Of a DNA stretch of 64,000 bases, positions 7,089 through 61,361 are shown one piece after another. Under the pieces are notes generated by a model. That model saw nothing but the letters and a program-made list of their open reading frames with translations. It made no database searches and had not been told where the DNA came from. A program made the translations under genes and the position numbers. The DNA lies in the IMG/VR virus record IMGVR_UViG_3300028864_000014, positions 62,001 to 126,000 of that record; one strand, 5' to 3'. Numbering within the stretch: position 1 is the first letter of the stretch; the number at the start of each line of letters is the position of its first letter.

Positions 7089-9434
7089 TTAGGCTATTGC
7101 ATCTACTATCGTGGTTGCATCAAATACTAATTTATTAACTCCTGTTGAACTAACAAATAAAATTTTTGTGTATGTAAGATAAACATAAGTTGATATTGTA
7201 AAATTAGAATGTGAAAAATTATTATTAACCTGATTTGACTGAAAATTACTACCAATAACATTAAACATAAAGTTACATCCGATATTATTTCCAGTAAAAT
7301 TATTTCCAACAGTATTTTGTGTATATTCATTTCCTATTATATTAACACTAAAATCACTTCCGATTACATTAGTAACAAAATTGTCTTCTATTGAGTTAGC
7401 TTGAAAATTCGAAATAATGTTATTATTACTGAAATTGGTTCCAATTCTATTACCTGCAAAATTGTCACCTGATATGATATTAATTTGAAATCTATCACCA
7501 ACAATATTAGACGTAAAATTATTATCTATAGTATTCTGATAAAATCCATTACCAATATCATTTGAATCAAATCCAGATTTAATATTATTCTGATAAAATC
7601 CATTTTTAATTGAATTAGAATTAAAAAGATTTGTGATTATATTATATCGAAAATTATACCCAATAATATTAATTTTAAAATTGTCACCAATTTTATTATA
7701 TTGAAAATTATCACAAACAATATTATTAATAAAATTAATACCAATAATATTATGATGATGCAGATTATTCATTATATTATATTGAAAATTAGACTTAATA
7801 ATATTGTTAAAAAATTGAATTTTAATATTATTATACATAAATGTTGCTCCAATTGAATTAGTATAAAAAGAATATTTTATCACATTAAGTACAAAATTCT
7901 TTGAAATTATATTTTTTGAAAAATTTTGTCCAATTGAATTTTGACTAAATCCATAACCAATTGAATTACCTTCATTAATATTTCCGTTATAATAACCAAA
8001 ATAATTACCAATTGAATTATTATTAAAATTGGATCCAATTGAGTTGTGCATAAACCCACTTCCAATTGAGTTATTATAAAAACTTTCACCAATTGAGTTA
8101 TTAGTAAAATTAAATCCTATCGTGTTACCATAAAATATATTTCCAAAAATAACACTAGTACAATTATTAAGAATATTATTATATCCATTATAAGATCCTA
8201 TATGATTATTATAAATATTACTAGTATATGACACAAACATAGCATAGTCTGAATATAATGTTGTACAAGGTATATTTGAGTTTATGTTATTATAATTAAT
8301 TGCAGTTGTACTCACATAACTTAAATTATTCCATTCAAATAATTTCCAAACATTGTCATTATCAGAAGATGGATTAATTCCAGTCACTCCACTATTTAAA
8401 CAAACATAAATAGTTACTCCACTATATAAAACTACATCATTATTGTTATATGTAGTTGAAGGATCCCAAATATTAGTAACATTTATTTGCCATCTACGAA
8501 ACTTAACATTTCTAAAATCAAAAGGAATATTATTATTCTGAAGAGTATCAATTCTTCTATAAATATAACCCTTTGTACAACCAGGTACAATTGCTTGATC
8601 ACTTACTGAATTATAATAAATTATATCTTTAGGATATAAAACTGAATAAGCTTCAGGTTTTAATGTGTTTGAGCTACTTGCAGTTACTAATAAAGGTTCT
8701 GTTATTCCACTATTGATATCAGAAGTACCTACAATAGTATGAACTGTCTGATAATCTGTAATCGAATAAGTTCTATTAATATTTAATCCATTAGAAAGGA
8801 TCAAAGCTCTCAAATCTGCATATAATATATTAGTGACACCTGATGTAGTATTTATTCCATTTATTCCATTTATTCCATTTATTCCTGATGTTCCATTTGT
8901 ACCACTCGCACCTGATGATCCATTAGTTCCATTTGATCCATTAGTTCCATTTATACCTGATGTACCAGTTTGACCATTTATACCTGATGTACCAGTTTGA
9001 CCATTTATACCTGATGTACCTGATGACCCAGCTGGTCCAATTGGAATATTAGTATATGACAGCACTCCATCAACATCTGAAACTAATATTTTACCTACTC
9101 CATATCCAGGAGATAAACAAGTAATACCAGATTCAATATTTATATTTTTAGTGTGTAGAGTATCAGTATCTGAGTCAAAATATAAAGTATCAGTTGTTGT
9201 ACCAGAATCTTCAAAAAAATACATTTGTTTTATTGTATTTTCTCCTACTCTCATCCACACATTTTCATCCGTTTCATTAAGAAAAAACTCTCCGATATAA
9301 ATATCAGTTGTTCTCCATGATGGTAGCAATGTATGATCATCATGTGATCCTCCCAACGCTGGAATTGTTGCAACATCACCAGAAACAGTATTTCGTTTTA
9401 CAATAACTCTACTATATTTTTCAACTTTAGACAT
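7089..9434 (-). CDS. tail fibre-like protein (GxxG low-complexity stalk plus N-x-IG-x-NF beta-helix repeats)
   Basis: GSSGTSGINGQTG repeats, then a long run of NNxIGxNF repeats. Likely start is ATG 9434 (MSKVEK) rather than TTG 9476. Confidence 0.7.
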   Translation of the reverse strand: MSKVEKYSRVIVKRNTVSGDVATIPALGGSHDDHTLLPSWRTTDIYIGEFFLNETDENVWMRVGENTIKQMYFFEDSGTTTDTLYFDSDTDTLHTKNINIESGITCLSPGYGVGKILVSDVDGVLSYTNIPIGPAGSSGTSGINGQTGTSGINGQTGTSGINGTNGSNGTNGSSGASGTNGTSGINGINGINGINTTSGVTNILYADLRALILSNGLNINRTYSITDYQTVHTIVGTSDINSGITEPLLVTASSSNTLKPEAYSVLYPKDIIYYNSVSDQAIVPGCTKGYIYRRIDTLQNNNIPFDFRNVKFRRWQINVTNIWDPSTTYNNNDVVLYSGVTIYVCLNSGVTGINPSSDNDNVWKLFEWNNLSYVSTTAINYNNINSNIPCTTLYSDYAMFVSYTSNIYNNHIGSYNGYNNILNNCTSVIFGNIFYGNTIGFNFTNNSIGESFYNNSIGSGFMHNSIGSNFNNNSIGNYFGYYNGNINEGNSIGYGFSQNSIGQNFSKNIISKNFVLNVIKYSFYTNSIGATFMYNNIKIQFFNNIIKSNFQYNIMNNLHHHNIIGINFINNIVCDNFQYNKIGDNFKINIIGYNFRYNIITNLFNSNSIKNGFYQNNIKSGFDSNDIGNGFYQNTIDNNFTSNIVGDRFQINIISGDNFAGNRIGTNFSNNNIISNFQANSIEDNFVTNVIGSDFSVNIIGNEYTQNTVGNNFTGNNIGCNFMFNVIGSNFQSNQVNNNFSHSNFTISTYVYLTYTKILFVSSTGVNKLVFDATTIVDAIA
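8851..9020. repeat. in-frame tandem repeats (9, 18 and 27 bp units)
   Basis: TTTATTCCA about 4 copies (8851-8886), GATCCATTAGTTCCATTT x2 (8917-8952), CCATTTATACCTGATGTACCAGTTTGA about 2.7 copies (8947-9020). Confidence 0.9.
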
Positions 9435-9490
9435 TAATAATTTATTATTTTTATTATATATTATTTTATTAAACAAAAAATATACACTTT

Positions 9491-26503: not shown

Positions 26504-29500
26504 ATGAAAATTGCACACTTAGCTGATGTTCACATTAGAAATCTAGAAAGACATGAAGAATATGATAAGATTTTTCAAAAAATTATAAAAAAATTACAAG
26601 AATTACAACCAGATAGAATAGTTATTGTAGGAGATTTATTTGAAAGTTACATTGAAATTTCAAATGAAGCTGAAATTATCGCTGGAGATTTCTTGAATAA
26701 GTTATCAAATATTGCGAAAGTAATAATAGTCAGAGGTAATCATGACATAAGAAAGAAAAGTTTAAATAGAGTTGATAGTATAGAAACTGTAGTTAAACTT
26801 ATGAATAATCCAAATGTAACTTACTATGATAAAACTGGTTTTTATGATGATGATAATGATAATTTCGTTTGGGTTGTGTATGAGCACTCAGATAAAGATA
26901 ATGATCCATGGTTAAATAATAAAAAAACTGATGATAAAATTCATATTGGATTATTTCATGATCCAGTTTTAAATGTAACATCAAATACAGGAAAAGTATT
27001 TAATGATGCTAATAAATATAAAAATATAAATTATTTTAATAATAATGATTTTGTTCTTATTGGTGATATTCACAAGCGTCAATATTTAAGAAACGATAAA
27101 TCTGCAGCATATTGTGGTTCAACAATCCAACAATCTTATGGTGAAACTGTTGAGAATCATGGTTTTTTATTATGGAATATTAAATCACCTTCTGATTTTA
27201 ATGTTACTGAATATGATATTGAAAATGATCATACATTTATAAATTTATATATTGATGAATCATCAGACTATGATAATTTAAATTTATCTGCTAATAATAT
27301 TGGAAAAGACACTGAGATTAAAGTTCATTGGAAAGAATACTCTTCAATCATTAATACAGTAAATGAAAAGAAGATACGAGATTATATTAAAAATAAATTT
27401 AACACAATTAAGGTAGTTTTTGAAAAAAATTATTTATATACAGATATATTATCATCTAAGATGTTATCAGAATCTATTGATTTGACTGATACTGAAACTC
27501 AAAGAGAAATATTTAATGAGTATTTAGTAGAACAGAAGTATAAAAAAGATGACATTGAATCTATACTTAATATTGATGATATCATCAATAGTAGAATACA
27601 ATTAGTAGATGTTTTGAAGAATACAGAATGGAGTATTGATAAATTCTGGTTTAGTAATTTTAAGTCTTATGGAGACGACAATGTAATAGAATGGAAAGAT
27701 ATTAATGGAATTGTACAGATTCATGGTGAAAATCAGGAAGGAAAAACTACGATTCTTGATGCTCTTACTTATATTCTATATGGTAAAACTACAACAACAT
27801 TAAGTCCTGAAAAATTTGGAGACTCTAGATACATAAATAATAAAAGAGAATTAGATTTTGTTAATGGTGGAGCAGTAATTAATTCAAATGGTAATAAATT
27901 TGTAATTCAGAGAAAGACTGAAAGAGTTTGGAATAAGGCACACACATCTTTAACAAGTTGTCCTACATCTTTAGATTTCTATAAGAGTGAAGATATTTGT
28001 GAAAAAAATAAATTAACTGATGAAGTTAAAAGTAAAACTCAAAAAGAATTAGATTCTATTTTAGGAGATTTGAAGGATTTTATTAGACTATCATTCACCA
28101 ACGCTGATAATTTAAATGATTTATTATCTGAAAATAGAAGTATTTTCATGGATAATATTATTAGAGATGCTGGATATGATATATTTGAAACTAAATCAAA
28201 TGAATTTAAAGAATATAAAAAAGAAATTATAGAAGAAAAATTAATTGTAAATATTCAAGATTCAGAAGAAAATATAAAAGAATTAAATTCTGATATAGTT
28301 GATATTAAAGCAATAGTAGATACTAATATTTCTGAAATTGAAAGAATAGAAAAAGAATTATTATTGTATAATATCACTAGAGATGAATTAAATAAAAAAT
28401 TAAGTAATATTGATTTATCAATGTTAACTTTCAATGAAGATTTGAATTTAAATACAATTAAGAATTATAATACTAAAATTGAAGAATCTAAAATACAAAG
28501 AGTTAATTTAGAAAAAGAAATTGATAAATTACCTACTGAGTTTGATTCATCTAAACTTGATGATTTTAAAATTAAATTGAAGCAAACAAATTTAAAAATT
28601 TCAGAGTTAAAAGATAAAATTTCAACTTTAAAAAATTCATTGTTAGAATCAGATGGAAAGATTGATAAAGTTAATGTTAAGATTGAAGAACTGAAGCAAA
28701 ATGAGATTAAAAAAATACTATCAAAAATAACAGCAAATGATTTGCAAATTGAAGTTATTAAAAATAAAAAATCTAATATTATAAAAGATGAGATAAAAAA
28801 AATAACTTCTCAAATTCAAGTTTTTGAATTAGAATCCATAGAATTAGCATCGAATATAAAACTTTTACAAAAAGATGGTATTAATGCTAAAAAATCAAAT
28901 GATGAATTAGATAAAGAAATTGAAACATTTAAAAATTCAAAATCATGTCCTAGTTGCGGTAGAGCTTATGATAAAAATGATCCAAATTACTCAGAACACT
29001 TAGCTCATTTAGAAGATAAAATTAGAAGTCTTGAAATTAAAAAAGAACCAAATTTATTAATAATAAAAGATTGTTTATTGAAATATAAAGAATTGAAAAA
29101 TGATTCAATTGATTGTAATTCAAATATCTTTAATTATGAAGATATGAAAAAAAGATTAGAACAAGGTGATTATAATGAAGATATATTATCAAAATTAAAA
29201 GATGTCGGTAGTAGCAAGACATTGAGACAAGATAATATAGAATTGAATATATCAATTGAAAATATTGAAAATAATAACTTTGATAATTATTTAACATTAA
29301 ATGAAAATATTGATAAGGGTAAAACTCTAATAACAAACATAGAAAAAGGAAAAGATAATACTTTACAATTAATAAAAAACATCGAAGTAGAATTAAAAGA
29401 AATCAATATCGATGATATTGAAAATAATATTACAATAGAAGAAATTAAGAAAGATAATTTTGATTTGAGAAATAAAAAAATATCGAATAGAGATAATATT

Positions 29501-30256
29501 ATTTTGACACTTGAAAATTTTAATTTTAAAATTAAAGAATTAAAATCAGAAATTGAAAAATACCAAGAATATAAAGTTAAAATTGATGAAAATAAAAAAA
29601 TTCAAATTTCAATTGATGATGTAGATTATAATATTAAAAATTATAAAGAAAAAATAAAAGATTTTTCAAAAATAAATATTGATTTAGAAAAAAACATTCT
29701 TCTTAAAGAAACTGACATATTTAATATATCTACTAAAATAAAAAAATATTTAAAGCAAAAGAAACGAGATGAGTTATTAAAGGAGTATCAAAAATGTATT
29801 AGTCGTGATGGATTACCTACATTTTTATTAAAAAAATCCATTCATTTAATAAATAAAGAATTGAATGATTTACTGAGTAATGTTGATTTTACATTATTCT
29901 TTGATGAAAATTTGAATTTGAGACTTAGTGCAGATGATAGACTTGATACTAGTCAAAATGCTATTGAAAGCTCTGGTAAGGAAAGGACATTTTGTGCCCT
30001 TGCTTTGAAAATATCTTTGAGACAAATAAATGTAAAATCCAAATCTACTTTCATTGTTTTAGATGAAATTATGGGTAAATTAATTGATGGTAAGAAAACA
30101 AAATCTGTTCAACAATTTTTAGAATTTATTGATGAATTGAAATATAAAGTAAATAAAATAGTAATTATTGAGCAAGTGCATAATATAAATTTTGATGCTT
30201 CAATTGAAGTTGATAAAGACGATGAATTAATTTCTCACTTAGAATTAGTTTATTAA
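26504..30256 (+). CDS. fused SbcD-SbcC (Mre11-Rad50; T4 gp47-gp46-like) nuclease-ATPase
   Basis: Phosphoesterase motifs ADVH, VGDLF, RGNHD and GDIH; Walker A GENQEGKTT; coiled coil with CPSC Zn hook; SSGKE signature; Walker B IVLDE. Confidence 0.92.
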   Translation: MKIAHLADVHIRNLERHEEYDKIFQKIIKKLQELQPDRIVIVGDLFESYIEISNEAEIIAGDFLNKLSNIAKVIIVRGNHDIRKKSLNRVDSIETVVKLMNNPNVTYYDKTGFYDDDNDNFVWVVYEHSDKDNDPWLNNKKTDDKIHIGLFHDPVLNVTSNTGKVFNDANKYKNINYFNNNDFVLIGDIHKRQYLRNDKSAAYCGSTIQQSYGETVENHGFLLWNIKSPSDFNVTEYDIENDHTFINLYIDESSDYDNLNLSANNIGKDTEIKVHWKEYSSIINTVNEKKIRDYIKNKFNTIKVVFEKNYLYTDILSSKMLSESIDLTDTETQREIFNEYLVEQKYKKDDIESILNIDDIINSRIQLVDVLKNTEWSIDKFWFSNFKSYGDDNVIEWKDINGIVQIHGENQEGKTTILDALTYILYGKTTTTLSPEKFGDSRYINNKRELDFVNGGAVINSNGNKFVIQRKTERVWNKAHTSLTSCPTSLDFYKSEDICEKNKLTDEVKSKTQKELDSILGDLKDFIRLSFTNADNLNDLLSENRSIFMDNIIRDAGYDIFETKSNEFKEYKKEIIEEKLIVNIQDSEENIKELNSDIVDIKAIVDTNISEIERIEKELLLYNITRDELNKKLSNIDLSMLTFNEDLNLNTIKNYNTKIEESKIQRVNLEKEIDKLPTEFDSSKLDDFKIKLKQTNLKISELKDKISTLKNSLLESDGKIDKVNVKIEELKQNEIKKILSKITANDLQIEVIKNKKSNIIKDEIKKITSQIQVFELESIELASNIKLLQKDGINAKKSNDELDKEIETFKNSKSCPSCGRAYDKNDPNYSEHLAHLEDKIRSLEIKKEPNLLIIKDCLLKYKELKNDSIDCNSNIFNYEDMKKRLEQGDYNEDILSKLKDVGSSKTLRQDNIELNISIENIENNNFDNYLTLNENIDKGKTLITNIEKGKDNTLQLIKNIEVELKEINIDDIENNITIEEIKKDNFDLRNKKISNRDNIILTLENFNFKIKELKSEIEKYQEYKVKIDENKKIQISIDDVDYNIKNYKEKIKDFSKINIDLEKNILLKETDIFNISTKIKKYLKQKKRDELLKEYQKCISRDGLPTFLLKKSIHLINKELNDLLSNVDFTLFFDENLNLRLSADDRLDTSQNAIESSGKERTFCALALKISLRQINVKSKSTFIVLDEIMGKLIDGKKTKSVQQFLEFIDELKYKVNKIVIIEQVHNINFDASIEVDKDDELISHLELVY

Positions 30257-31693: not shown

Positions 31694-31987
31694 ATGGAGA
31701 AAACAAAAACAAAATCATTAGATGAAATTTTATCAGAAAATGGAATTTCTACTAATACTGAAGAAGAATTTAAATTGATATTATGGAATGATGATGTAAA
31801 TTCATTTGAATGGGTTATCACATGCTTAATGGCTTATTTAAAATTTCCACCTAAAAAAGCAGAAGCATCAGCCTATAATGTACATCTTATTGGTAAAGAT
31901 GTTATTAAAACTGGTTCAAGAGAAACATTAGAGCCTTATAAAAAATTATTAGAAGAGAGAGGATTATCTCTCACAATAGAACAATAG
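31694..31987 (+). CDS. clpS: ATP-dependent Clp protease adaptor ClpS
   Basis: KLILWNDDVNSFEWVITCL...AYNVHLIGK; the WNDD form is typical of Bacteroidota ClpS as I recall it. Confidence 0.9.
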   Translation: MEKTKTKSLDEILSENGISTNTEEEFKLILWNDDVNSFEWVITCLMAYLKFPPKKAEASAYNVHLIGKDVIKTGSRETLEPYKKLLEERGLSLTIEQ

Positions 31988-31988
31988 A

Positions 31989-32267
31989 ATGAAAAAATTT
32001 ACAATAGATTATATATTATATATTTATAAAACTTTTATATTAAAAAATAAAAGCGGAGATATTTATAAAAAATGGGCGAAATCATTAATGAGATTATTAG
32101 AATATACATACGATTTGTATATTTGGATTTTTGCCTTGATGTTATTTTTACCAGTTTTATTAATTTCTGTTACAATTGGTAAAAAAATAAAAATGAAAAA
32201 ATTTCAATTAATGAAAGCGTTCATTAAATACACTAACGATTACAATAACAATAATAAAATTAATTAA
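31989..32267 (+). CDS. small membrane protein
   Basis: Hydrophobic segment LYIWIFALMLFLPVLLISVTI. Confidence 0.6.
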   Translation: MKKFTIDYILYIYKTFILKNKSGDIYKKWAKSLMRLLEYTYDLYIWIFALMLFLPVLLISVTIGKKIKMKKFQLMKAFIKYTNDYNNNNKIN

Positions 32268-32276
32268 TTAAAGCCT

Positions 32277-34811
32277 ATGAATTACTCAAAAGAAGTAGAA
32301 GAAGTCATTAAAAAAAGTAAGGACATTGCTATTAAGATTAAGTCTAAATCAATCAGACCTGAACATTTATTTCTATCAATGATAGATGATGAATATTCTG
32401 ATGCATCTCAAATTATGAGGGATCTTAATCTAAATATTGATGCCATTAAGAAAACAATATCTGAGTGGTCTTCTGTGATGCAAGAACAAATTGGAGTAAA
32501 TTCACTCAGAAAAAATGCTTCAATTCCACTGGAATTAGAAACTGAAAAAATTCTAAAAGATTCTGTTGTTTTTGCGAAATCAATGGATTCAGATGAAGTT
32601 TGTATTGAACATGTTTTTTATTCAATATTGGATAATAGCAATAATCTTGTTTCAGAGTTATTTAATAAATCACCTGAAATTTTAAGAAGTTTGAAAAATA
32701 GATTGAAGAATGAAGAAGAAGAACTTAATATTAATGATGAATTAGAAAATGTTAATAATATGGACGAAGAACAAGAAGAAGTAACAGGAAGTTCAAAAAG
32801 TAAGTCAAAAACTAAATTGATTGATCAATTTGGTACAAATCTTACAAATCTCGCAAAAGAAGGAAAACTTGATCCAGTAGTTGGACGTGCAGATGAAATT
32901 AAAAGAATTACACAAATTTTATCCAGACGTAAGAAAAACAATCCTGTATTAGTTGGAGAACCTGGTGTAGGTAAATCAGCAATTGTTGAAGGATTAGCTC
33001 AATTAATCGTAGATGGACTTGTTCCTGAAAATTTACAAAACAAGAAAGTTATCACTCTTGATATGGGTTCATTAGTAGCAGGAACTAAATATCGTGGTGA
33101 ATTTGAGCAACGATTAAGAGGTATTGTAAAAGAGATGGAAGAAAATCCTGATATCATTCTATTTATAGATGAAATTCACACTATTATTGGAGCTGGAGGT
33201 GCTCAAGGATCACTTGATGCTTCTAATATGTTGAAACCAGGATTGGCAAGAGGAACATTCAGATGTATTGGTGCTACTACTCTTGAAGAATATCGTAAAT
33301 ATATTGAAAAAGATGCAGCATTAGAACGTAGATTTCAGAAAGTTGTTGTAGAAGCAACTAGCAAATCAGAAACATTAGAAATTCTTAAGAATATCAAAAA
33401 ACAATATGAAGATCATCACAAAGTTACTTATACTGATGATGCATTAGAAGCTTGTGTCAATTTATCTGACAAATATATATCAGAAAAATTCTTTCCTGAT
33501 AAAGCAATTGATGTTCTAGATGAGGCTGGTGCTATGGTTCATGTGAATGGTACAAGTGCTATTCCTGAAAAAATTGTTGAGCTTAGTAAGAAAATAAAAA
33601 TATCTATAGTAGAAAAACTTGATTGTATTTCTTCACAAAAATATGAACTTGCTGCTGATCATAGAGATAATGAAAAACAATGGAAAGCTGAACTTGAAAG
33701 TGAAAGAGAAGTATGGAGTCAAGAGCACTCAGATAATCGTGCAATGGTAACAGAAAAAGATATTGCTGAGGTTGTCGCTCTTATGACAAAAATTCCAGTA
33801 GATAATGTTTCTATTGATGAAAACAATAAGCTTAAATTTATGGCTGATAAAGTAAAAACTATTGTAATTGGACAAAACGAAGCTGTTGATAAGATAGTTC
33901 AATCAGTCAAGAGATCAAGAGTTGGAATTAATAGTCATGATAAGCCAGTTGGATCATTTATTTTCTCTGGTCCTACAGGAGTAGGTAAAACCTATCTTGC
34001 AAAAATTATGGCAAAAGAATTATTTGGTTCTGAAGATGCGATGATTAGAATTGATATGAGTGAATTTATGGAAAAATTCTCCGTATCTAGATTAGTAGGA
34101 GCACCTCCAGGTTATGTTGGATATGAAGATGGAGGTAAATTAACTGAAGCAGTAAGACGTAAGCCTTATTCTATTATTCTTCTTGATGAAATAGAAAAAG
34201 CTCATCCTGATGTTCAAAATATTCTACTTCAAGTATTGGATGATGGGGTATTAACTGATAGTAATGGCCGTAAAGTGGATTTTAAAAATACTATCATTGT
34301 TATGACAACAAATGCAGGTTCAAGAAAATTGAAAGATTTTGGAACTGGTATTGGATTTGGACTTTCTAAAAACAATCAAGATTCTAAAAATTCTGTTCTT
34401 AAAAAAGAATTAGAAAAAGTGTTTAGTCCAGAATTTTTAAATCGTGTTGATGAAGTTATAAATTTCAATTCATTAAGTAAAGAAAATATTTGTGGTATTA
34501 TTGATGTTGAATGTAAATCATTAATCTCAAATCTTAAAGAAAAAGGATATGATGTAATTATATCTCAATCACTTAAAGATTATTTATTTGAAAATGGTTA
34601 TGATGAAAACTATGGTGCAAGACCATTGAAGAGAGCTATTCAGAGTAATATTGAAGATAAACTTACTGATGCGATTATTGATCAAGAAATCTCAGTTGGT
34701 GATACATTATCATTAATATACGACAAAGATAGTTCATCTGTAAAAATTTCAAAATTATCATCTAAAGAAATTAAAAGTGGTAATATTTTAACTGAAAATA
34801 CCACAGTTTAA
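32277..34811 (+). CDS. clpC: ClpC-type AAA+ chaperone/protease ATPase
   Basis: Clp-N repeats (PEHL, IEHV); Walker A GEPGVGKS and GPTGVGKT; FIDEIH; UVR-like [10 protein letters not shown]; GAPPGYVGY; [10 protein letters not shown]. Confidence 0.95.
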
Positions 34812-42581: not shown

Positions 42582-43736
42582 ATGAATACAGAATTAATAG
42601 TAGGTGTAAATATTGGTAGTTTACCTGATCCATTTCCAGAATTGAATAATAATAAAATTCGAAAAATAAAGAGTACTGGAGACTTGAATCAAGAATATCG
42701 AGATATGTACGAACAAATGGAGAAATCTTTATCAGGAATTAAAGAGGTTAAAGAAAATCAAGTTGTTACAGGTACAATATCATCAATTAATCAAAAAGAA
42801 ATCTTAATTGATTTTGGATTTAAAGATTTTATCTATGTAGAAAAACCTAAATTGAATACAGTTGTAACTGAATTACTAGTTGGTGATTCAATTGATGTTT
42901 TAATTACATCAGTTTCAGATAAACCATATTTAATCAAAGGCTCAATTACAGAACTCATCAAACAAAATGTTCATAATAAAATGAAAGAATATTATGAACA
43001 AAGATTACCACTTATTTCTGAAGTTAAATCAATGATACCAGCAGGTTATATGATGGACATTCTTATGGATAATGTTAGAGTTGAAGCATTTATGCCTAAT
43101 ACATTAGCAGATGTTAATAAATTATCTGATTCAGAATCTATATTGGGTGTAACATTTGAAGTAATGTTAGAAACATTACAACAAGAAAAAGGTGTTTATG
43201 TAGTATCAAGAAAGAAATATTTACAATCATTAATTCCAGATGAAGTAAGAAAATTGAAGCATGATATTACCTATGAAGGTGTTATCACAGGTACAACTCC
43301 ATTTGGTGTTTTCGTTCAATTTAAAGCCACTGAAAATGGTCCTAATTGTTTAACTGGAATGGTACATAAAGCTAATATTGGTGAAAAATGGCAAGAAAAA
43401 TGGAATGAAATATTACCTGGTATGACAATTGAATTCTATGTTAAGGAAGTTATCAAAAATAATAAAATTATTCTTACTCAAATTTTAAAAGAATCTATGT
43501 GGGATAGCATTAAAGTTGGTAAAGTATTAACAGGAAAAATCAGAGACATTAAAAACTTTGGTGCTCTTATTACTTTGGATGATGAAACAACTGGACTAAT
43601 TCAAACTGCATATATTAACAGAAATGAGAAAAAATATAATGTTGGAGATGAAGTCAAAGTGAAAGTAATCTCATTAATTAAAGATGATAGAAAAATTTAT
43701 CTAAACTTTGCTGATGTGAAGACAAAATTAGATTAA
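42582..43736 (+). CDS. rpsA: ribosomal protein S1-like protein (about four S1 domains)
   Basis: VTGTISSI...IDFG; VKSMIPAGY; GVITGTTPFGVFV...GMVH; GKIRDIKNFGALI...GLI...VKVKVI. Confidence 0.8.
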   Translation: MNTELIVGVNIGSLPDPFPELNNNKIRKIKSTGDLNQEYRDMYEQMEKSLSGIKEVKENQVVTGTISSINQKEILIDFGFKDFIYVEKPKLNTVVTELLVGDSIDVLITSVSDKPYLIKGSITELIKQNVHNKMKEYYEQRLPLISEVKSMIPAGYMMDILMDNVRVEAFMPNTLADVNKLSDSESILGVTFEVMLETLQQEKGVYVVSRKKYLQSLIPDEVRKLKHDITYEGVITGTTPFGVFVQFKATENGPNCLTGMVHKANIGEKWQEKWNEILPGMTIEFYVKEVIKNNKIILTQILKESMWDSIKVGKVLTGKIRDIKNFGALITLDDETTGLIQTAYINRNEKKYNVGDEVKVKVISLIKDDRKIYLNFADVKTKLD

Positions 43737-56884: not shown

Positions 56885-57562
56885 ATGAAAAAGAAAATAG
56901 TAATATTCACTGGTGCTGGAATAAGTGCAGAAAGCGGAATTCAAACTTTCAGGGATTCTGACGGACTTTGGGAGCAATATGATGTAAAAGACGTTGCAAC
57001 TATTGATGGTTGGAGAAAAGATAGACAATTAGTTTTAAAATTTTATAATGAAAGACATAAACAATTAGATACTGTAGAACCTAATTCAGCTCATTACTTT
57101 CTTGCTGAATTGGAAAAAAAGTATGATGTTCAGATAGTTACTCAAAATGTCGACGATCTCCATGAGAGAGCAGGAAGTACAAATGTTCTACATCTTCATG
57201 GACAATTAACAAAGATGAGAGCATTTAATAATTTTACTGTTTATGATTGGCCAAAAGATTTTGACATACAAACAGATAGTGTGGATGAAAATGGCGATAC
57301 ATTAAGACCACATATTGTTTGGTTTGGAGAAGCTGTTCCAAATATGGGTAAAGCTGAAAAAATAACAAAAGAAGCAGATATACTTATTGTAATTGGAACA
57401 TCATTACAAGTTTATCCTGCAGCAAATTTATTATATAAAGCAAATTTTAGAGCACCTATATATTATATTGATCCTTCTGATTCTGATATTGGTATAGATA
57501 TTAAAAATTTTACTCATATAAAAGAAACAGCAACAGAAGGAGTTAAAAAATTAAAATTGTGA
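56885..57562 (+). CDS. cobB: Sir2-family NAD-dependent protein deacylase
   Basis: GAGISAESGIQTFR, TQNVDDLHE, LHLHG, RPHIVWFGE and GTSLQVYPAA. Confidence 0.95.
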   Translation: MKKKIVIFTGAGISAESGIQTFRDSDGLWEQYDVKDVATIDGWRKDRQLVLKFYNERHKQLDTVEPNSAHYFLAELEKKYDVQIVTQNVDDLHERAGSTNVLHLHGQLTKMRAFNNFTVYDWPKDFDIQTDSVDENGDTLRPHIVWFGEAVPNMGKAEKITKEADILIVIGTSLQVYPAANLLYKANFRAPIYYIDPSDSDIGIDIKNFTHIKETATEGVKKLKL

Positions 57563-58350: not shown

Positions 58351-58604
58351 ATTCAATTAAAACAGTAAAATCAAGATATAGTATAACTACAATTTCACCA
58401 AATTTTTATAGTAATTTGTCATTAAGTGGCAATACAAATGATATTATTTCTGGTTCAACTGGATTATTAGAGCAAGGTTATATATTTGTTCCTTATATAA
58501 TGGCTACAACAACATCAATTATTACTGAATCAAGAGAACGTAAGATAAACAGACTAAGAGAAGAAAGAGTAGAAAAACTTAAAAAATTAGGATGGAATGA
58601 CTGA
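58347..58604 (+). CDS. small protein with gp23-like G-Y-x-x-x-P-Y motif and RxxKL tag
   Basis: LLEQGYIFVPYIMAT versus T4 gp23 DAGIYYAPYVALT; ERVEKLKKL. Confidence 0.55.
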   Translation: MNSIKTVKSRYSITTISPNFYSNLSLSGNTNDIISGSTGLLEQGYIFVPYIMATTTSIITESRERKINRLREERVEKLKKLGWND

Positions 58605-58875
58605 TAAAAAATATAAACAAGGAGATGAAGTTGTATGTATTAATAATGATGGAGGTTATGATAAATATTTAACAATTGGAAAAAAATATAAAATTCATTA
58701 TATTTATAAAGGAAAATTAACCAATTTAGATCATTTTAGGATAAAATCTGACAAAATAAATTCATTTTTTATAAGTCCATTAGGAATAATTTTTTTATCA
58801 CCAAATGAGTTTAAAATTAAGAAAAGAAAAGAAAAATTAGAAAAAATCAATAAATTAATTTTTAATGATATTTAA
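58597..58875 (+). CDS. GDEVVCI (SH3-like) protein with RxxKL tag
   Basis: QGDEVVCINN...LTIGKKY...RKEKLEKI. Confidence 0.75.
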   Translation: MTDKKYKQGDEVVCINNDGGYDKYLTIGKKYKIHYIYKGKLTNLDHFRIKSDKINSFFISPLGIIFLSPNEFKIKKRKEKLEKINKLIFNDI

Positions 58876-59113
58876 TCAAGGAGATGAAGTTGTTTGTATT
58901 CAAAATGTTGGTTATACTGATTTTTTAACAATTAGCAAATCATATAAAGTTTTACTTTCCTACTATGGAAGTGTAACAGAAACTGAACATATACGTGTTC
59001 AGAAAGATGATAAAAATGGTCATGTTGATATATTTAGTAGTAGATTTATATCTATCAAAGAATTCAAAAAAATAAAAAGAAAAGAAAAACTAAATATATT
59101 AAATCTAATATAA
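58865..59113 (+). CDS. GDEVVCI (SH3-like) protein with RxxKL tag
   Basis: QGDEVVCIQN...LTISKSY...RKEKLNIL. Confidence 0.75.
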   Translation: MIFNQGDEVVCIQNVGYTDFLTISKSYKVLLSYYGSVTETEHIRVQKDDKNGHVDIFSSRFISIKEFKKIKRKEKLNILNLI

Positions 59114-59141: not shown

Positions 59142-59363
59142 ATGAAAATTTTAAGAAAAAAAGACACTTTTAAGAAAGTACCTGACGCAAGCATTAATGA
59201 TGTTGTAGCTATCAAATCTTATATTGAACAAGGATGGAAGCATTGTTCAAAAAAAGAATATAAAGATTTTTTCAAAACTGCAGTTTCTGAGAAATTAGTT
59301 GAAAAGAAAATTGAAAAAGAAGAAATTAAAGAAAAAAAGAAAGAAAAGAAGCACGGCAAATGA
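59142..59363 (+). CDS. basic hypothetical protein
   Basis: 73 aa, Lys/Glu-rich. Confidence 0.6.
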   Translation: MKILRKKDTFKKVPDASINDVVAIKSYIEQGWKHCSKKEYKDFFKTAVSEKLVEKKIEKEEIKEKKKEKKHGK

Positions 59364-59794
59364 TTTTAGATATAATCAAATATGATGATTCTAACTCAGG
59401 AAAATTAAGAAAACTAAATGTAAATGTAAAAAAGGAAAATCCTTTTTTGCTTTCACTTATTAAAAATATGTTTGAAACTCTTAATTATCACAAATTTGAA
59501 TTTGGGTTATCTGCTCCACAAGTTGGACATAACTTAAATTTATTTGTTATTAATAATCCTGATTTAAAAGAAGTATTTATTAATCCAGAAATATATTTAG
59601 AAGGACTTTTTATTCAAAACAAAGAAAGATGTTTAAGCTTACCAAATTTAGAATTTCCTATAAATAGGAGATCAATTGTTAAGATTAAATATTATGATAT
59701 AAATTGGAATTATAAAATGTCTTCGTTTAAAGATTTAAATGCCATAGCTATTCAACATCAATTTGATCATATTAACGGAAAATTAATTATTTGA
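59360..59794 (+). CDS. def: peptide deformylase-like protein with degenerate active site
   Basis: GLSAPQVG, VFINPEI, ERCLS (canonical EGCLS) and QHQFDHING (canonical QHEMDHL.G). Confidence 0.85.
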   Translation: MILDIIKYDDSNSGKLRKLNVNVKKENPFLLSLIKNMFETLNYHKFEFGLSAPQVGHNLNLFVINNPDLKEVFINPEIYLEGLFIQNKERCLSLPNLEFPINRRSIVKIKYYDINWNYKMSSFKDLNAIAIQHQFDHINGKLII

Positions 59795-60177
59795 TGAATA
59801 TATTTAATAGAAAAAAAAGGGAATTAAAAAGGGAACTAAAATACAATGAACTGAACAAATTATTCAGGATTAAACATGGTATAATTTGTAATTGGAGGAT
59901 TAAAAAATATACTTTGCATCCAACTACAGTTGAAGGACTTGTTTTTGATGAAAAGTTTAATTCATTTTTTTTGAGAGAATATGGAATATTTCCACATTCC
60001 TTTAATGAGTTTGCTTGTATTAACTATTCCTTTGATCCAAAATTTGATAATTTTCCAGTTGATAAATTACAGGAATTATATAATAAAATTGAGTCTGTTT
60101 TTCCTGATCCATTTATTAAAATTAATAGATTAAAAAAATTAAAAAATATTAATTCTGTTAAATATGAAGAACGGTGA
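59791..60177 (+). CDS. hypothetical protein with RxxKL-type tag
   Basis: Ends INRLKKLKNINS. Confidence 0.7.
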   Translation: MMNIFNRKKRELKRELKYNELNKLFRIKHGIICNWRIKKYTLHPTTVEGLVFDEKFNSFFLREYGIFPHSFNEFACINYSFDPKFDNFPVDKLQELYNKIESVFPDPFIKINRLKKLKNINSVKYEER

Positions 60178-60394
60178 TAAAATTACTTATATTAGTAACG
60201 ATATTTGTGTTTTTGATAAATATAAAACATATACTATTATTAATATACACAATGATATTATAACATATGTGAGTTATCTTGATAATTATAAAAAGTTATG
60301 GTATATAGGTTGTAGTTATACTATGAATAAATTCATAACATATAATCAATATAGAAAATTAAAATTAAATAAAATTAATGAAAAAATATGTTAG
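60164..60394 (+). CDS. SH3-like small protein with RxxKL tag
   Basis: MKNGDKITYI...YRKLKLNKI. Confidence 0.7.
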   Translation: MKNGDKITYISNDICVFDKYKTYTIINIHNDIITYVSYLDNYKKLWYIGCSYTMNKFITYNQYRKLKLNKINEKIC

Positions 60395-61103: not shown

Positions 61104-61361
61104 ATGAAATCAATACTTTACAAAAAAGGTGAAAAATTTGTTTGTATAGATAATACATCTAGATATACTGGAGTAGAATTAGGCTATTCTTCTTTGACGT
61201 TATTGAAAATTGGCGGTGTTTACACATTTCGTGATATTAATAGTTATGGCGAAATGAATTTTTTGGAACTACGCGGATATAGTTTCAGAAAGCAAAGGTT
61301 TGTGAAATATTCAGAGTTAAGAAAGATAAAATTAGAAAAATTAAATACTATAAACATATAA
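61104..61361 (+). CDS. SH3-like small protein with RxxKL tag
   Basis: KKGEKFVCIDN...LRKIKLEKL. Confidence 0.75.
   Translation: MKSILYKKGEKFVCIDNTSRYTGVELGYSSLTLLKIGGVYTFRDINSYGEMNFLELRGYSFRKQRFVKYSELRKIKLEKLNTINI

What the first reader, a model, noticed from the sequence alone, without database searches (positions are those of the whole stretch)
59360..59794. Peptide deformylase with metal ligands kept but the catalytic Glu replaced
Seen: Cys (ERCLS) and both His (HQFDH, 59756-59770) are retained, but HExxH is HQxxH, EGCLS is ERCLS, and the first Gly of motif 1 is absent. The C-terminal helix is missing. Known: the HExxH Glu is required for efficient catalysis. Inference: a pseudo-enzyme that might bind formylated N-termini or occupy the ribosome exit site, shielding proteins from deformylation and hence from downstream N-terminal processing and N-degron (ClpS) exposure.
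Basis: partly seen in the sequence, partly recalled or inferred. Interest (0 to 1): 0.6.

Follow-up and report, generated by a model that had tools for sequence, protein, structure and literature searches.

The report
Megaphage deformylase lacking its catalytic glutamate
A giant peat-bog phage carries a short peptide deformylase gene whose catalytic glutamate is replaced by glutamine; the gene is still strongly conserved, so it is probably a working protein that binds rather than efficiently deformylates new protein ends.

Summary
ORF 59360-59794 (+, 144 aa) is a clear Pfam peptide deformylase (PF01327, 1.5e-31) with a confident PDF fold (pLDDT 94.9, TM 0.91 to PDB 1lme). It keeps Cys91, His133, His137 and Gln54. 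It reads HQFDH where HExxH is expected, ERCLS where EGCLS is expected, and has Glu in place of the first Gly of motif 1.

The window lies in a 235-kb fragment of a roughly 0.7-Mb phage from peat metagenomes.

- **Not an error.** The same CAA codon occurs in at least four diverged lineages from many samples, and in independent run contigs.
- **Not decay.** Those lineages differ by dS 0.5-0.9 but have dN/dS 0.05-0.13, lower than most neighbouring genes.
- **One origin.** The HQxxH clade arose once, nested among about 85 short phage PDFs that all keep HExxH.
- **Not special to HQxxH.** The missing C-terminal helix is a trait of the whole family, as in the active Vp16 PDF. The motif 1 and motif 2 changes are shared with HExxH sister phages.

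Best reading: a selected, catalytically crippled deformylase homologue that still binds metal and formyl-Met ends. A slow residual enzyme cannot be excluded. The genome does encode ClpS, a ClpA-like ATPase and ClpP, but so do relatives with canonical PDFs.

The parts
59360..59794 (+). Short peptide-deformylase homologue (144 aa, P0001) with HQxxH in place of HExxH
   Evidence: ORF. Pfam PF01327 at 1.5e-31. PHROG 2890. AF2 pLDDT 94.9. TM 0.91 and rmsd 1.6 A to PDF 1lme.
59498..59521 (+). Motif 1 (E47-F-G-L-S-A-P-Q54). The first Gly is replaced by Glu, Val/Ile by Phe, and Ala by Ser. Gly49 and the oxyanion Gln54 are kept.
   Evidence: Alignments. The same changes occur in HExxH sisters P0006-P0008.
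59624..59638 (+). Motif 2 (E89-R-C91-L-S). The metal-ligand Cys is kept and Gly is replaced by Arg.
   Evidence: This position is R or K within the clade and G/S/A/N/E/T/M across the family.
59756..59770 (+). Motif 3 (H133-Q134-F-D-H137). Both His ligands are kept. The catalytic Glu is replaced by Gln (CAA at 59759-59761).
   Evidence: CAA in all four Q lineages, GAA in the sisters. One search shows no variant in contigs of independent runs.
59142..59363 (+). Conserved upstream 73-aa protein. It has an N-terminal domain starting MKILRK, with conserved GW.YC and YKDF, and a Lys/Glu-rich tail. Its stop overlaps the PDF start (ATGA).
   Evidence: It sits directly upstream of the short PDF in every locus examined down to 59% PDF identity. 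It is absent next to the 182-aa PDF of G002 and next to P0087. It has no Pfam or PHROG family.

Best explanation
The gene encodes a folded, metal-binding member of a family of minimal phage peptide deformylases carried by giant (about 0.7 Mb) AT-rich phages. In one lineage of these phages the general acid/base Glu of HExxH became Gln by a single GAA-to-CAA change. This followed earlier remodelling of the residues that close the Met-binding S1' pocket: G47E, V48F and I130A, which correspond to AtPDF1B Gly41, Ile42 and Ile130. The Cys-His-His metal site, the oxyanion Gln54 and the rest of the cleft are kept under strong purifying selection. The protein therefore most likely still binds a metal and formyl-Met N-termini but turns them over very slowly or not at all. 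In effect it would be a natural substrate-trap-type pseudo-deformylase that the phage uses as a binder of formylated protein ends.

Shown: homology, fold, residue states, single origin, and selection.
Inferred: loss of catalysis, retained formyl-peptide binding, and the role in infection.
For: - **Family and fold:**
- **Rarity of Gln134:** Glu is present in 79 of 79 other short-family members and in all distant PDFs sampled. It is also present in all 86 viral PDF loci outside the clade (85 scored HE; the one scored 'HV', L086, reads QHEYDH). A metagenome-wide scan for the pattern Q-H-Q-[FY]-D-H found only this clade plus 4 chance hits that are not PDFs.
- **Single origin:** the Q clade is monophyletic (SH-aLRT 98) and sister to HExxH proteins P0006-P0008 (joint support 99), deep inside the family.
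- **Orthology:** synteny from Sir2 through the small genes, the 73-aa gene and the PDF to DNA ligase is conserved.
- **Selection after the change:** among the four Q lineages dS is 0.53-0.89 and dN/dS is 0.05-0.13. That is as low as or lower than Sir2 and most flanking genes (0.07-0.63). Of 31 variable residues in the clade, only 3 conservative ones (R90K, L94F, N139K) fall within the three motif windows (residues 47-56, 89-95, 132-140).
- **Literature:** B. subtilis DefA E133A is enzymatically inactive yet functional as an inhibitor of the kinase PtkA (PMC11194573). AtPDF1B G41Q and G41M lower kcat/Km about 1000-fold, mainly through kcat, and block full closure (PMC3101196). AtPDF1B numbering Cys91/His137 coincides with this protein's numbering.
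Against: - No activity or binding measurement exists for this protein, or for any natural HQxxH PDF.
- The same conservation pattern is expected of a slow enzyme.
- PDFs are very fast enzymes, so a large drop could still leave useful turnover.
- A stoichiometric binder of all nascent chains is quantitatively implausible, so the actual target is unknown.
- The G41 result comes from a plant enzyme. The first Gly varies in this family and is left out of the updated motif in PMC12690207.
- Only 33% of this phage genome is in hand, so a second, canonical PDF cannot be excluded.
Confidence: 0.5

Rival explanations
1. It is still a working deformylase. Catalysis survives with Gln134 at a reduced but sufficient rate, or another group takes over proton transfer. 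Candidates are solvent or the nearby carboxylate of Glu47, which arose before the Glu-to-Gln change. On this reading the gene keeps the family's ancestral role of adding deformylation capacity during infection.
For: All other catalytic elements are kept (Gln54, Glu89, Cys91, Leu92, His133, His137) and are under strong constraint. The order of events, G47E first and E134Q later, is compatible with a hand-over of the catalytic role. Related phages carry one PDF each, so the gene may be the lineage's only copy. PMC12690207 reports that exact motif conservation is not required for PDF activity.
Against: Glu at this position was invariant in every other PDF sampled here. E133A is used as a catalytically dead DefA (PMC11194573). 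Gln cannot shuttle protons (established mechanism of HExxH metallohydrolases). A bulky residue at the first Gly of motif 1 itself cost about 1000-fold in AtPDF1B (PMC3101196).
Confidence: 0.3
2. It is a non-catalytic protein whose selected function no longer involves formyl-Met ends. It would be a moonlighting protein-protein interaction, as when B. subtilis DefA inhibits the tyrosine kinase PtkA independently of catalysis. The conserved upstream 73-aa protein or a host factor could be the partner.
For: There is a precedent for a catalysis-independent PDF function (PMC11194573). The gene pair is conserved and translationally coupled. The S1' pocket residues are remodelled.
Against: Strict retention of the metal ligands, the oxyanion Gln and the substrate-binding strands is not required for a surface interaction. 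The small-protein partner is also present next to canonical HExxH PDFs, so it does not explain the Glu-to-Gln change. No partner was identified.
Confidence: 0.15
3. It is an artefact or a decaying gene: a sequencing or assembly error, or a recently inactivated gene drifting neutrally.
For: The clade is shallow (90-92% protein identity), and the change is a single base.
Against: The same codon appears in many independent assemblies and samples. dS is 0.5-0.9 with dN/dS of 0.05-0.13, and no lineage has a stop or frameshift. The gene is more constrained than most of its neighbours.
Confidence: 0.03

Closest known systems
Vp16 phage PDF (137 aa, PDB 5MTC; type 1B minimal PDF; PMC5591237)
   Same: Both are phage-encoded. 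Both have the PDF core only and lack the ribosome-binding C-terminal helix. Both end in a hydrophobic Ile a few residues after the second His. Sequence match E = 3.3e-10.
   Different: [quoted passage not shown] It ends one residue later than Vp16, and one residue earlier than its own HExxH relatives, which end in Asp.
The 142-146 aa short PDF family of giant AT-rich phages (P0006-P0088; G001, 501 kb)
   Same: The members are orthologues with the same length, 49-78% identity, the same gene neighbourhood and the same upstream small protein.
   Different: All of them keep HExxH. Most keep GVGLAAPQ and EGCLS.
Inactive accessory PDFs of S. aureus and S. pneumoniae (type 3; Margolis 2000/2001, as cited in PMC12690207)
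   Same: They are natural PDF homologues with substitutions in catalytic motifs and no detectable activity.
   Different: They are bacterial paralogues that sit beside an active PDF, and their substitutions are reported in motifs I and II. Here the gene is a viral orthologue, apparently single-copy in related phages, and the substitution is the motif III Glu.
Engineered variants B. subtilis DefA E133A and AtPDF1B G41Q/G41M
   Same: The same two positions are altered. E133A is inactive but retains a non-catalytic function (PMC11194573). G41Q and G41M cost about 1000-fold in kcat/Km (PMC3101196).
   Different: Those are laboratory mutants. This is a natural combination, fixed and maintained by selection.
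Cyanophage S-SSM7 PDF (PDB 3UWA; PMC3660681)
   Same: It is a phage auxiliary PDF with a short C-terminus (E = 1e-7).
   Different: It is an active enzyme with canonical motifs, from a different clade and a different host ecology.

Membership tests
Peptide deformylase (Pfam PF01327, EC 3.5.1.88) | Sequence match above the curated family threshold | tested here: met
   109.6 bits against a 22.8 cut-off, profile positions 2-147 of 156.
Peptide deformylase (Pfam PF01327, EC 3.5.1.88) | NCBIfam equivalog TIGR00079 score above its cut-off (functional equivalence) | tested here: not met
   83.2 bits against a cut-off of 103.95.
Peptide deformylase (Pfam PF01327, EC 3.5.1.88) | PDF alpha+beta fold | tested here: met
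   AF2 pLDDT 94.9. Foldseek TM 0.86-0.91 to many solved PDFs.
Peptide deformylase (Pfam PF01327, EC 3.5.1.88) | Metal ligands: the Cys of motif 2 and the two His of motif 3 | tested here: met
   Cys91, His133 and His137 align with the ligands.
Peptide deformylase (Pfam PF01327, EC 3.5.1.88) | Motif 1: Gln, second Gly and Ala-Ala core (updated motif PhiGPhiAAXQ, PMC12690207) | tested here: inconclusive
   F-G-L-S-A-P-Q keeps Gly49 and Gln54. Ala51 is Ser, a change shown to be tolerated in Vibrio integron PDFs (PMC12690207). The classical first Gly is Glu47.
Peptide deformylase (Pfam PF01327, EC 3.5.1.88) | Motif 2: EGCLS | tested here: not met
   The motif reads ERCLS. The Gly position is variable in this phage family, and a 184-aa HExxH PDF (P0094) also has ERCLS.
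Peptide deformylase (Pfam PF01327, EC 3.5.1.88) | Motif 3: the catalytic Glu of HExxH | tested here: not met
   The motif reads HQFDH. Codon CAA at 59759-59761.
Peptide deformylase (Pfam PF01327, EC 3.5.1.88) | Deformylase activity on formyl-Met peptides | not testable with these tools
   This needs an enzyme assay or complementation.
Minimal phage PDFs without a C-terminal helix (Vp16-like) | Phage-encoded, core only, chain ends within about 6-8 residues of the second His on a hydrophobic residue | tested here: met
   The gene lies in an IMG/VR virus record. The protein ends G-K-L-I-I, 7 residues after His137. Compare PMC5591237.
Pseudoenzyme (a catalytically dead homologue retained by selection) | A key catalytic residue is lost while the gene stays under purifying selection | tested here: met
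   E134Q, with dN/dS of 0.05-0.13 at dS 0.5-0.9 across four lineages. The gene is more constrained than most of its neighbours.
Pseudoenzyme (a catalytically dead homologue retained by selection) | Demonstrated absence of catalytic activity | not testable with these tools
   This is inferred only from the E133A precedent (PMC11194573) and the general HExxH mechanism.
Inactive accessory PDF paralogues (type 3-like) | Coexists with an active PDF in the same genome | tested here: inconclusive
   One PDF match in the 235-kb record, which is 33% complete. Related phages G001 (70% complete) and G002 (complete) each have a single PDF. The 711-kb contig could not be scanned.

The most novel reading that the evidence does not exclude
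This is the first natural 'reader' of formyl-Met: a viral PDF turned into a non-hydrolysing binder of formylated N-termini. Together with its conserved Lys-rich partner gene and/or the phage's own ClpS, ClpA-like ATPase and ClpP, it would decide the fate of selected nascent proteins during infection, through retention of the formyl group, blocked Met excision, or targeted stabilisation or degradation.
Probability: 0.15. Interest if true: 0.8.

Novelty: new variant of a known kind. Interest (0 to 1): 0.55.

Why it matters
Phage PDFs are among the commonest auxiliary genes, and those tested so far are active enzymes. A naturally fixed HQxxH version under strong selection would be a ready-made substrate-trap form of PDF. 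It suggests that some giant phages use the PDF scaffold for something other than bulk deformylation. It also offers a natural matched pair, the HQxxH clade and its HExxH sister orthologues, for testing what the catalytic Glu and the closure residues contribute. That the same genome encodes ClpS, a ClpA-like ATPase and ClpP makes N-terminus-dependent proteostasis in megaphages directly testable.

Tried and rejected
- **Complex prediction.** Complex prediction of the PDF with the upstream 73-aa protein scored 0.26 against a mark of 0.32, which gives no verdict. It is not used as evidence either way.
- **Phage record searches.** A DNA search of phage records with 5 kb around the gene found no close relative, only short Sir2 matches to huge uncultured phages. 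A tblastn search of phage records found only PDFs at or below 37% identity.
- **Neighbouring small genes.** Pfam, PHROG and ESM Atlas gave no family for them or for the 73-aa protein.
- **Literature.** Searches for E133 and E133Q mutants mostly hit unrelated uses of 'e133'. No paper on a PDF pseudoenzyme was found. The primary enzymology of Glu-133 (Rajagopalan et al. 2000) is seen only as a cited title, so the size of the expected activity loss rests on E133A being described as inactive (PMC11194573) and on general knowledge.
- **Other N-terminal processing genes.** Fmt and the Leu/Phe transferase were sought in G000, G001 and G002, and Met aminopeptidase in G000 only. None was found.
- **Tree.** The careful treekit search did not finish in 300 s, so the quick IQ-TREE tree was used.
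- **Other genetic code.** The apparent 'two TGA inside' flag was considered and rejected. The TGA codons are the stop and the next codon, the downstream gene starts at the TGATG overlap, and long ORFs read cleanly under table 11.
- **Inhibitor sponge.** Considered and judged unlikely, because bulky residues at the first Gly of motif 1 weaken actinonin binding in AtPDF1B (PMC3101196).
- **Big representative-protein search.** Not run. The word search, the viral locus survey and the metagenome pattern scan already bounded the clade.

Full report
**What is there**

The ORF at 59360-59794 (+) encodes 144 residues. It matches Pfam Pep_deformylase end to end at 1.5e-31, 109.6 bits against a cut-off of 22.8, and PHROG 2890, peptide deformylase. 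It falls below the NCBIfam equivalog cut-off, 83.2 bits against 103.95.

HMMER alignments to solved PDFs put H133-Q-F-D-H137 on HExxH, E-R-C91-L-S on EGCLS, and E47-F-G-L-S-A-P-Q54 on motif 1. The chain ends seven residues after His137. An AlphaFold2 model built on 76 homologues has pLDDT 94.9.

**Where it lies**

The window is bases 62001-126000 of a 235,318-bp IMG/VR virus record that CheckV rates 33% complete. GC content is about 23%. The nearest protein cluster (P0002, 92% identical) occurs on a 711,471-bp contig. Related records are 501 kb (70% complete) and 640 kb (complete, with terminal repeats). This is therefore a phage of about 0.7 Mb. The runs that hold this DNA are peat metagenomes.

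**Not an error**

- Proteins identical to P0001 are encoded on other IMG/VR and JGI contigs from different samples.
- Logan contigs of three runs not flagged as the possible source of this DNA (X7, X8, X11) cover 59756-59770 with no differing letter. No variant is listed at 59759-59761.

**Evolution**

A word-based search found about 90 short (142-146 aa) relatives. In an alignment of them, only P0001-P0005 and the fragment P0060 read HQFDH. Every other member reads HE[YF]DH, apart from a few Asp-to-Asn variants and one His-to-Asn variant.

Glu is present at this position in 79 of 79 other family members and in all 32 more distant PDFs. It is also present in all 86 viral PDF loci outside the clade: 85 were scored HE, and the one scored 'HV' (L086) reads QHEYDH, so that score is a scripting artefact. 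A metagenome-wide pattern scan for Q-H-Q-[FY]-D-H-[LI]-x-G-K returned only this clade plus four chance hits outside PDFs.

In a quick maximum-likelihood tree the five HQxxH proteins form one clade (SH-aLRT 98). That clade is sister to P0006-P0008 (joint support 99) and is nested deep in the family. Gene order is the same around the HQxxH genes and their HExxH sisters: Sir2, several small genes, a 73-78 aa gene, the PDF, more small genes, and then NAD-dependent DNA ligase. They are therefore orthologues.

**Order of changes**

- Shared by the HQxxH clade and its HExxH sisters: G47E/Q, V48F, A51S, F69L and I130A, plus a non-Gly residue in motif 2.
- Specific to the HQxxH clade: E134Q (GAA to CAA), G9D, M97L, R/K114I, L138I and loss of the terminal Asp.

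AtPDF1B numbering coincides with this protein's numbering at Cys91 and His137. Residues 47, 48 and 130 therefore correspond to AtPDF1B Gly41, Ile42 and Ile130, the residues shown to drive closure of the S1' pocket. G41Q and G41M lowered kcat/Km about 1000-fold, mainly through kcat (PMC3101196).

The first Gly also varies elsewhere in this family (S, V, E, K), and so does the motif 2 Gly (S, A, N, E, T, M). PMC12690207 drops the first Gly from its updated motif.

**Selection**

The four HQxxH lineages with DNA in hand differ by dS 0.53-0.89 but by dN of only 0.044-0.068, giving dN/dS of 0.05-0.13. This is similar to the HExxH sisters compared with each other (0.10).

In the same genome pairs the gene is as constrained as Sir2 and more constrained than the other flanking genes, which have dN/dS of 0.07-0.63. 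Of the 31 variable residues in the clade, only R90K, L94F and N139K fall within the three motif windows (residues 47-56, 89-95, 132-140). No copy has a stop or frameshift. Decay is excluded, so the Gln form is maintained by selection.

**What it most likely does**

The Glu of HExxH is the proton shuttle of PDF. B. subtilis DefA E133A is used as an inactive enzyme, yet it still carries out a non-catalytic function (PMC11194573).

With Gln134, a bulky residue at the closure Gly, and everything needed to hold a metal and a formyl group retained, the most economical reading is a protein that binds formyl-Met ends or a similar ligand but hydrolyses them very slowly or not at all. I put this at about 0.5. 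A residual or compensated enzyme is at about 0.3, and an unrelated moonlighting role at about 0.15. Sequence data cannot separate a trap from a slow enzyme.

- **Exit-site occupation.** The anatomy does not favour it. The C-terminal helix that docks E. coli PDF on the ribosome is missing. It is missing in the whole family, as it is in the active Vp16 PDF (PMC5591237).
- **ClpS.** The genome does encode a canonical-looking ClpS (31694-31987, with the N-D-D and His binding residues present). It also encodes a ClpA-type ATPase with an IGF loop (32277-34811), and ClpP 4.5 kb beyond the window end. Relatives with canonical PDFs also have ClpS. No Leu/Phe transferase or Fmt was found in G000, G001 or G002, and no Met aminopeptidase in G000. 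This is context, not evidence for a link.

**A conserved partner gene**

A 60-78 aa protein, with a conserved N-terminal domain and a Lys/Glu-rich tail, sits immediately upstream of the short PDF with overlapping stop and start. This holds in every locus examined down to 59% PDF identity. It is absent beside the 182-aa, helix-bearing PDF of the complete 640-kb phage and beside P0087.

It might replace the lost ribosome-binding helix. This is speculation: the complex prediction gave no verdict, and the protein has no known family.

**Limits**

- Only a third of this phage genome is available, so a second PDF cannot be excluded. Related phages have one each.
- The tree is the quick version.
- dN/dS is a pairwise Nei-Gojobori estimate in a very AT-rich genome.

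Noticed in passing
window 31694-31987 (+), 31989-32267 (+), 32277-34811 (+); ClpP at G000:C1:130534-131052 (locus L115, beyond the window end): The phage encodes an apparently complete N-degron proteolysis set. It comprises a ClpS homologue (97 aa, PF02617 at 9.5e-17, N-D-D and His binding residues present), an 844-aa ClpA/ClpC-type ATPase (Clp_N plus two AAA modules, an IGF-type ClpP loop, no full ClpB middle domain), and ClpP. ClpS is also present in the related 501-kb and 640-kb phages.
   Followed up: partly
window 59142-59363 (+); also L002 5783-6004, L014 5768-6004, L028 1935-2147 (-), L111 2298-2501, L113 2322-2504: A small protein of unknown family is conserved directly upstream of the short PDF and is translationally coupled to it. 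It has an N-terminal domain starting MKILRK, with conserved GW.YC and YKDF, and a Lys/Glu-rich tail. It is absent where the PDF has its own C-terminal helix (G002). It could be a partner or a ribosome tether. The complex prediction gave no verdict.
   Followed up: partly
whole window / G000: The record is a 235-kb fragment rated 33% complete, and a near-identical gene lies on a 711,471-bp contig. Relatives are 501 kb and 640 kb (the latter complete with terminal repeats). This is a phage of about 0.7 Mb and 23% GC from peat metagenomes, near the upper size limit known for phages.
   Followed up: partly
window 42582-43736 (+): A 384-aa protein with several S1 RNA-binding domains resembles ribosomal protein S1 (NCBIfam rpsA models at about 1e-34, far below their cut-offs). 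It is another translation-related gene in the phage.
   Followed up: no
window 56885-57562 (+): A Sir2/CobB-type NAD-dependent protein deacylase (225 aa, 1.8e-62) is conserved 1.8 kb upstream of the PDF in all related phages, with dN/dS of 0.07-0.18.
   Followed up: partly
window 26504-30256 (+) and 7089-9476 (-): A 1250-aa fusion of a calcineurin-like phosphoesterase with an SbcC-like AAA domain, resembling SbcCD in one chain. Separately, a 795-aa protein with collagen triple-helix repeats, possibly a fibre.
   Followed up: no
proteins P0077, P0027/P0071/P0075, P0044 (relatives, not in the window): Other members of the short phage PDF family show isolated motif changes. P0077 has Asn for the second metal-ligand His (HEFDN), seen on a single 509-bp contig. 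Three have HEYNH. One has EGCSS. None was checked for error or conservation.
   Followed up: no
window 58597-58875, 58865-59113, 60164-60394, 61104-61361 (+): Several small neighbouring ORFs of 76-92 aa share a similar pattern: G-D/E-x-V/F-V-C-I near the N-terminus and a K-rich stretch with K-L-x-K-I/L near the C-terminus. This suggests a locally expanded paralogue family of unknown function.
   Followed up: no
L111 3189-4409 (-), next to the PDF of a related phage contig: An IS605 OrfB / Cas12f-like TnpB gene lies immediately downstream of the PDF module in a related 96-kb contig.
   Followed up: no
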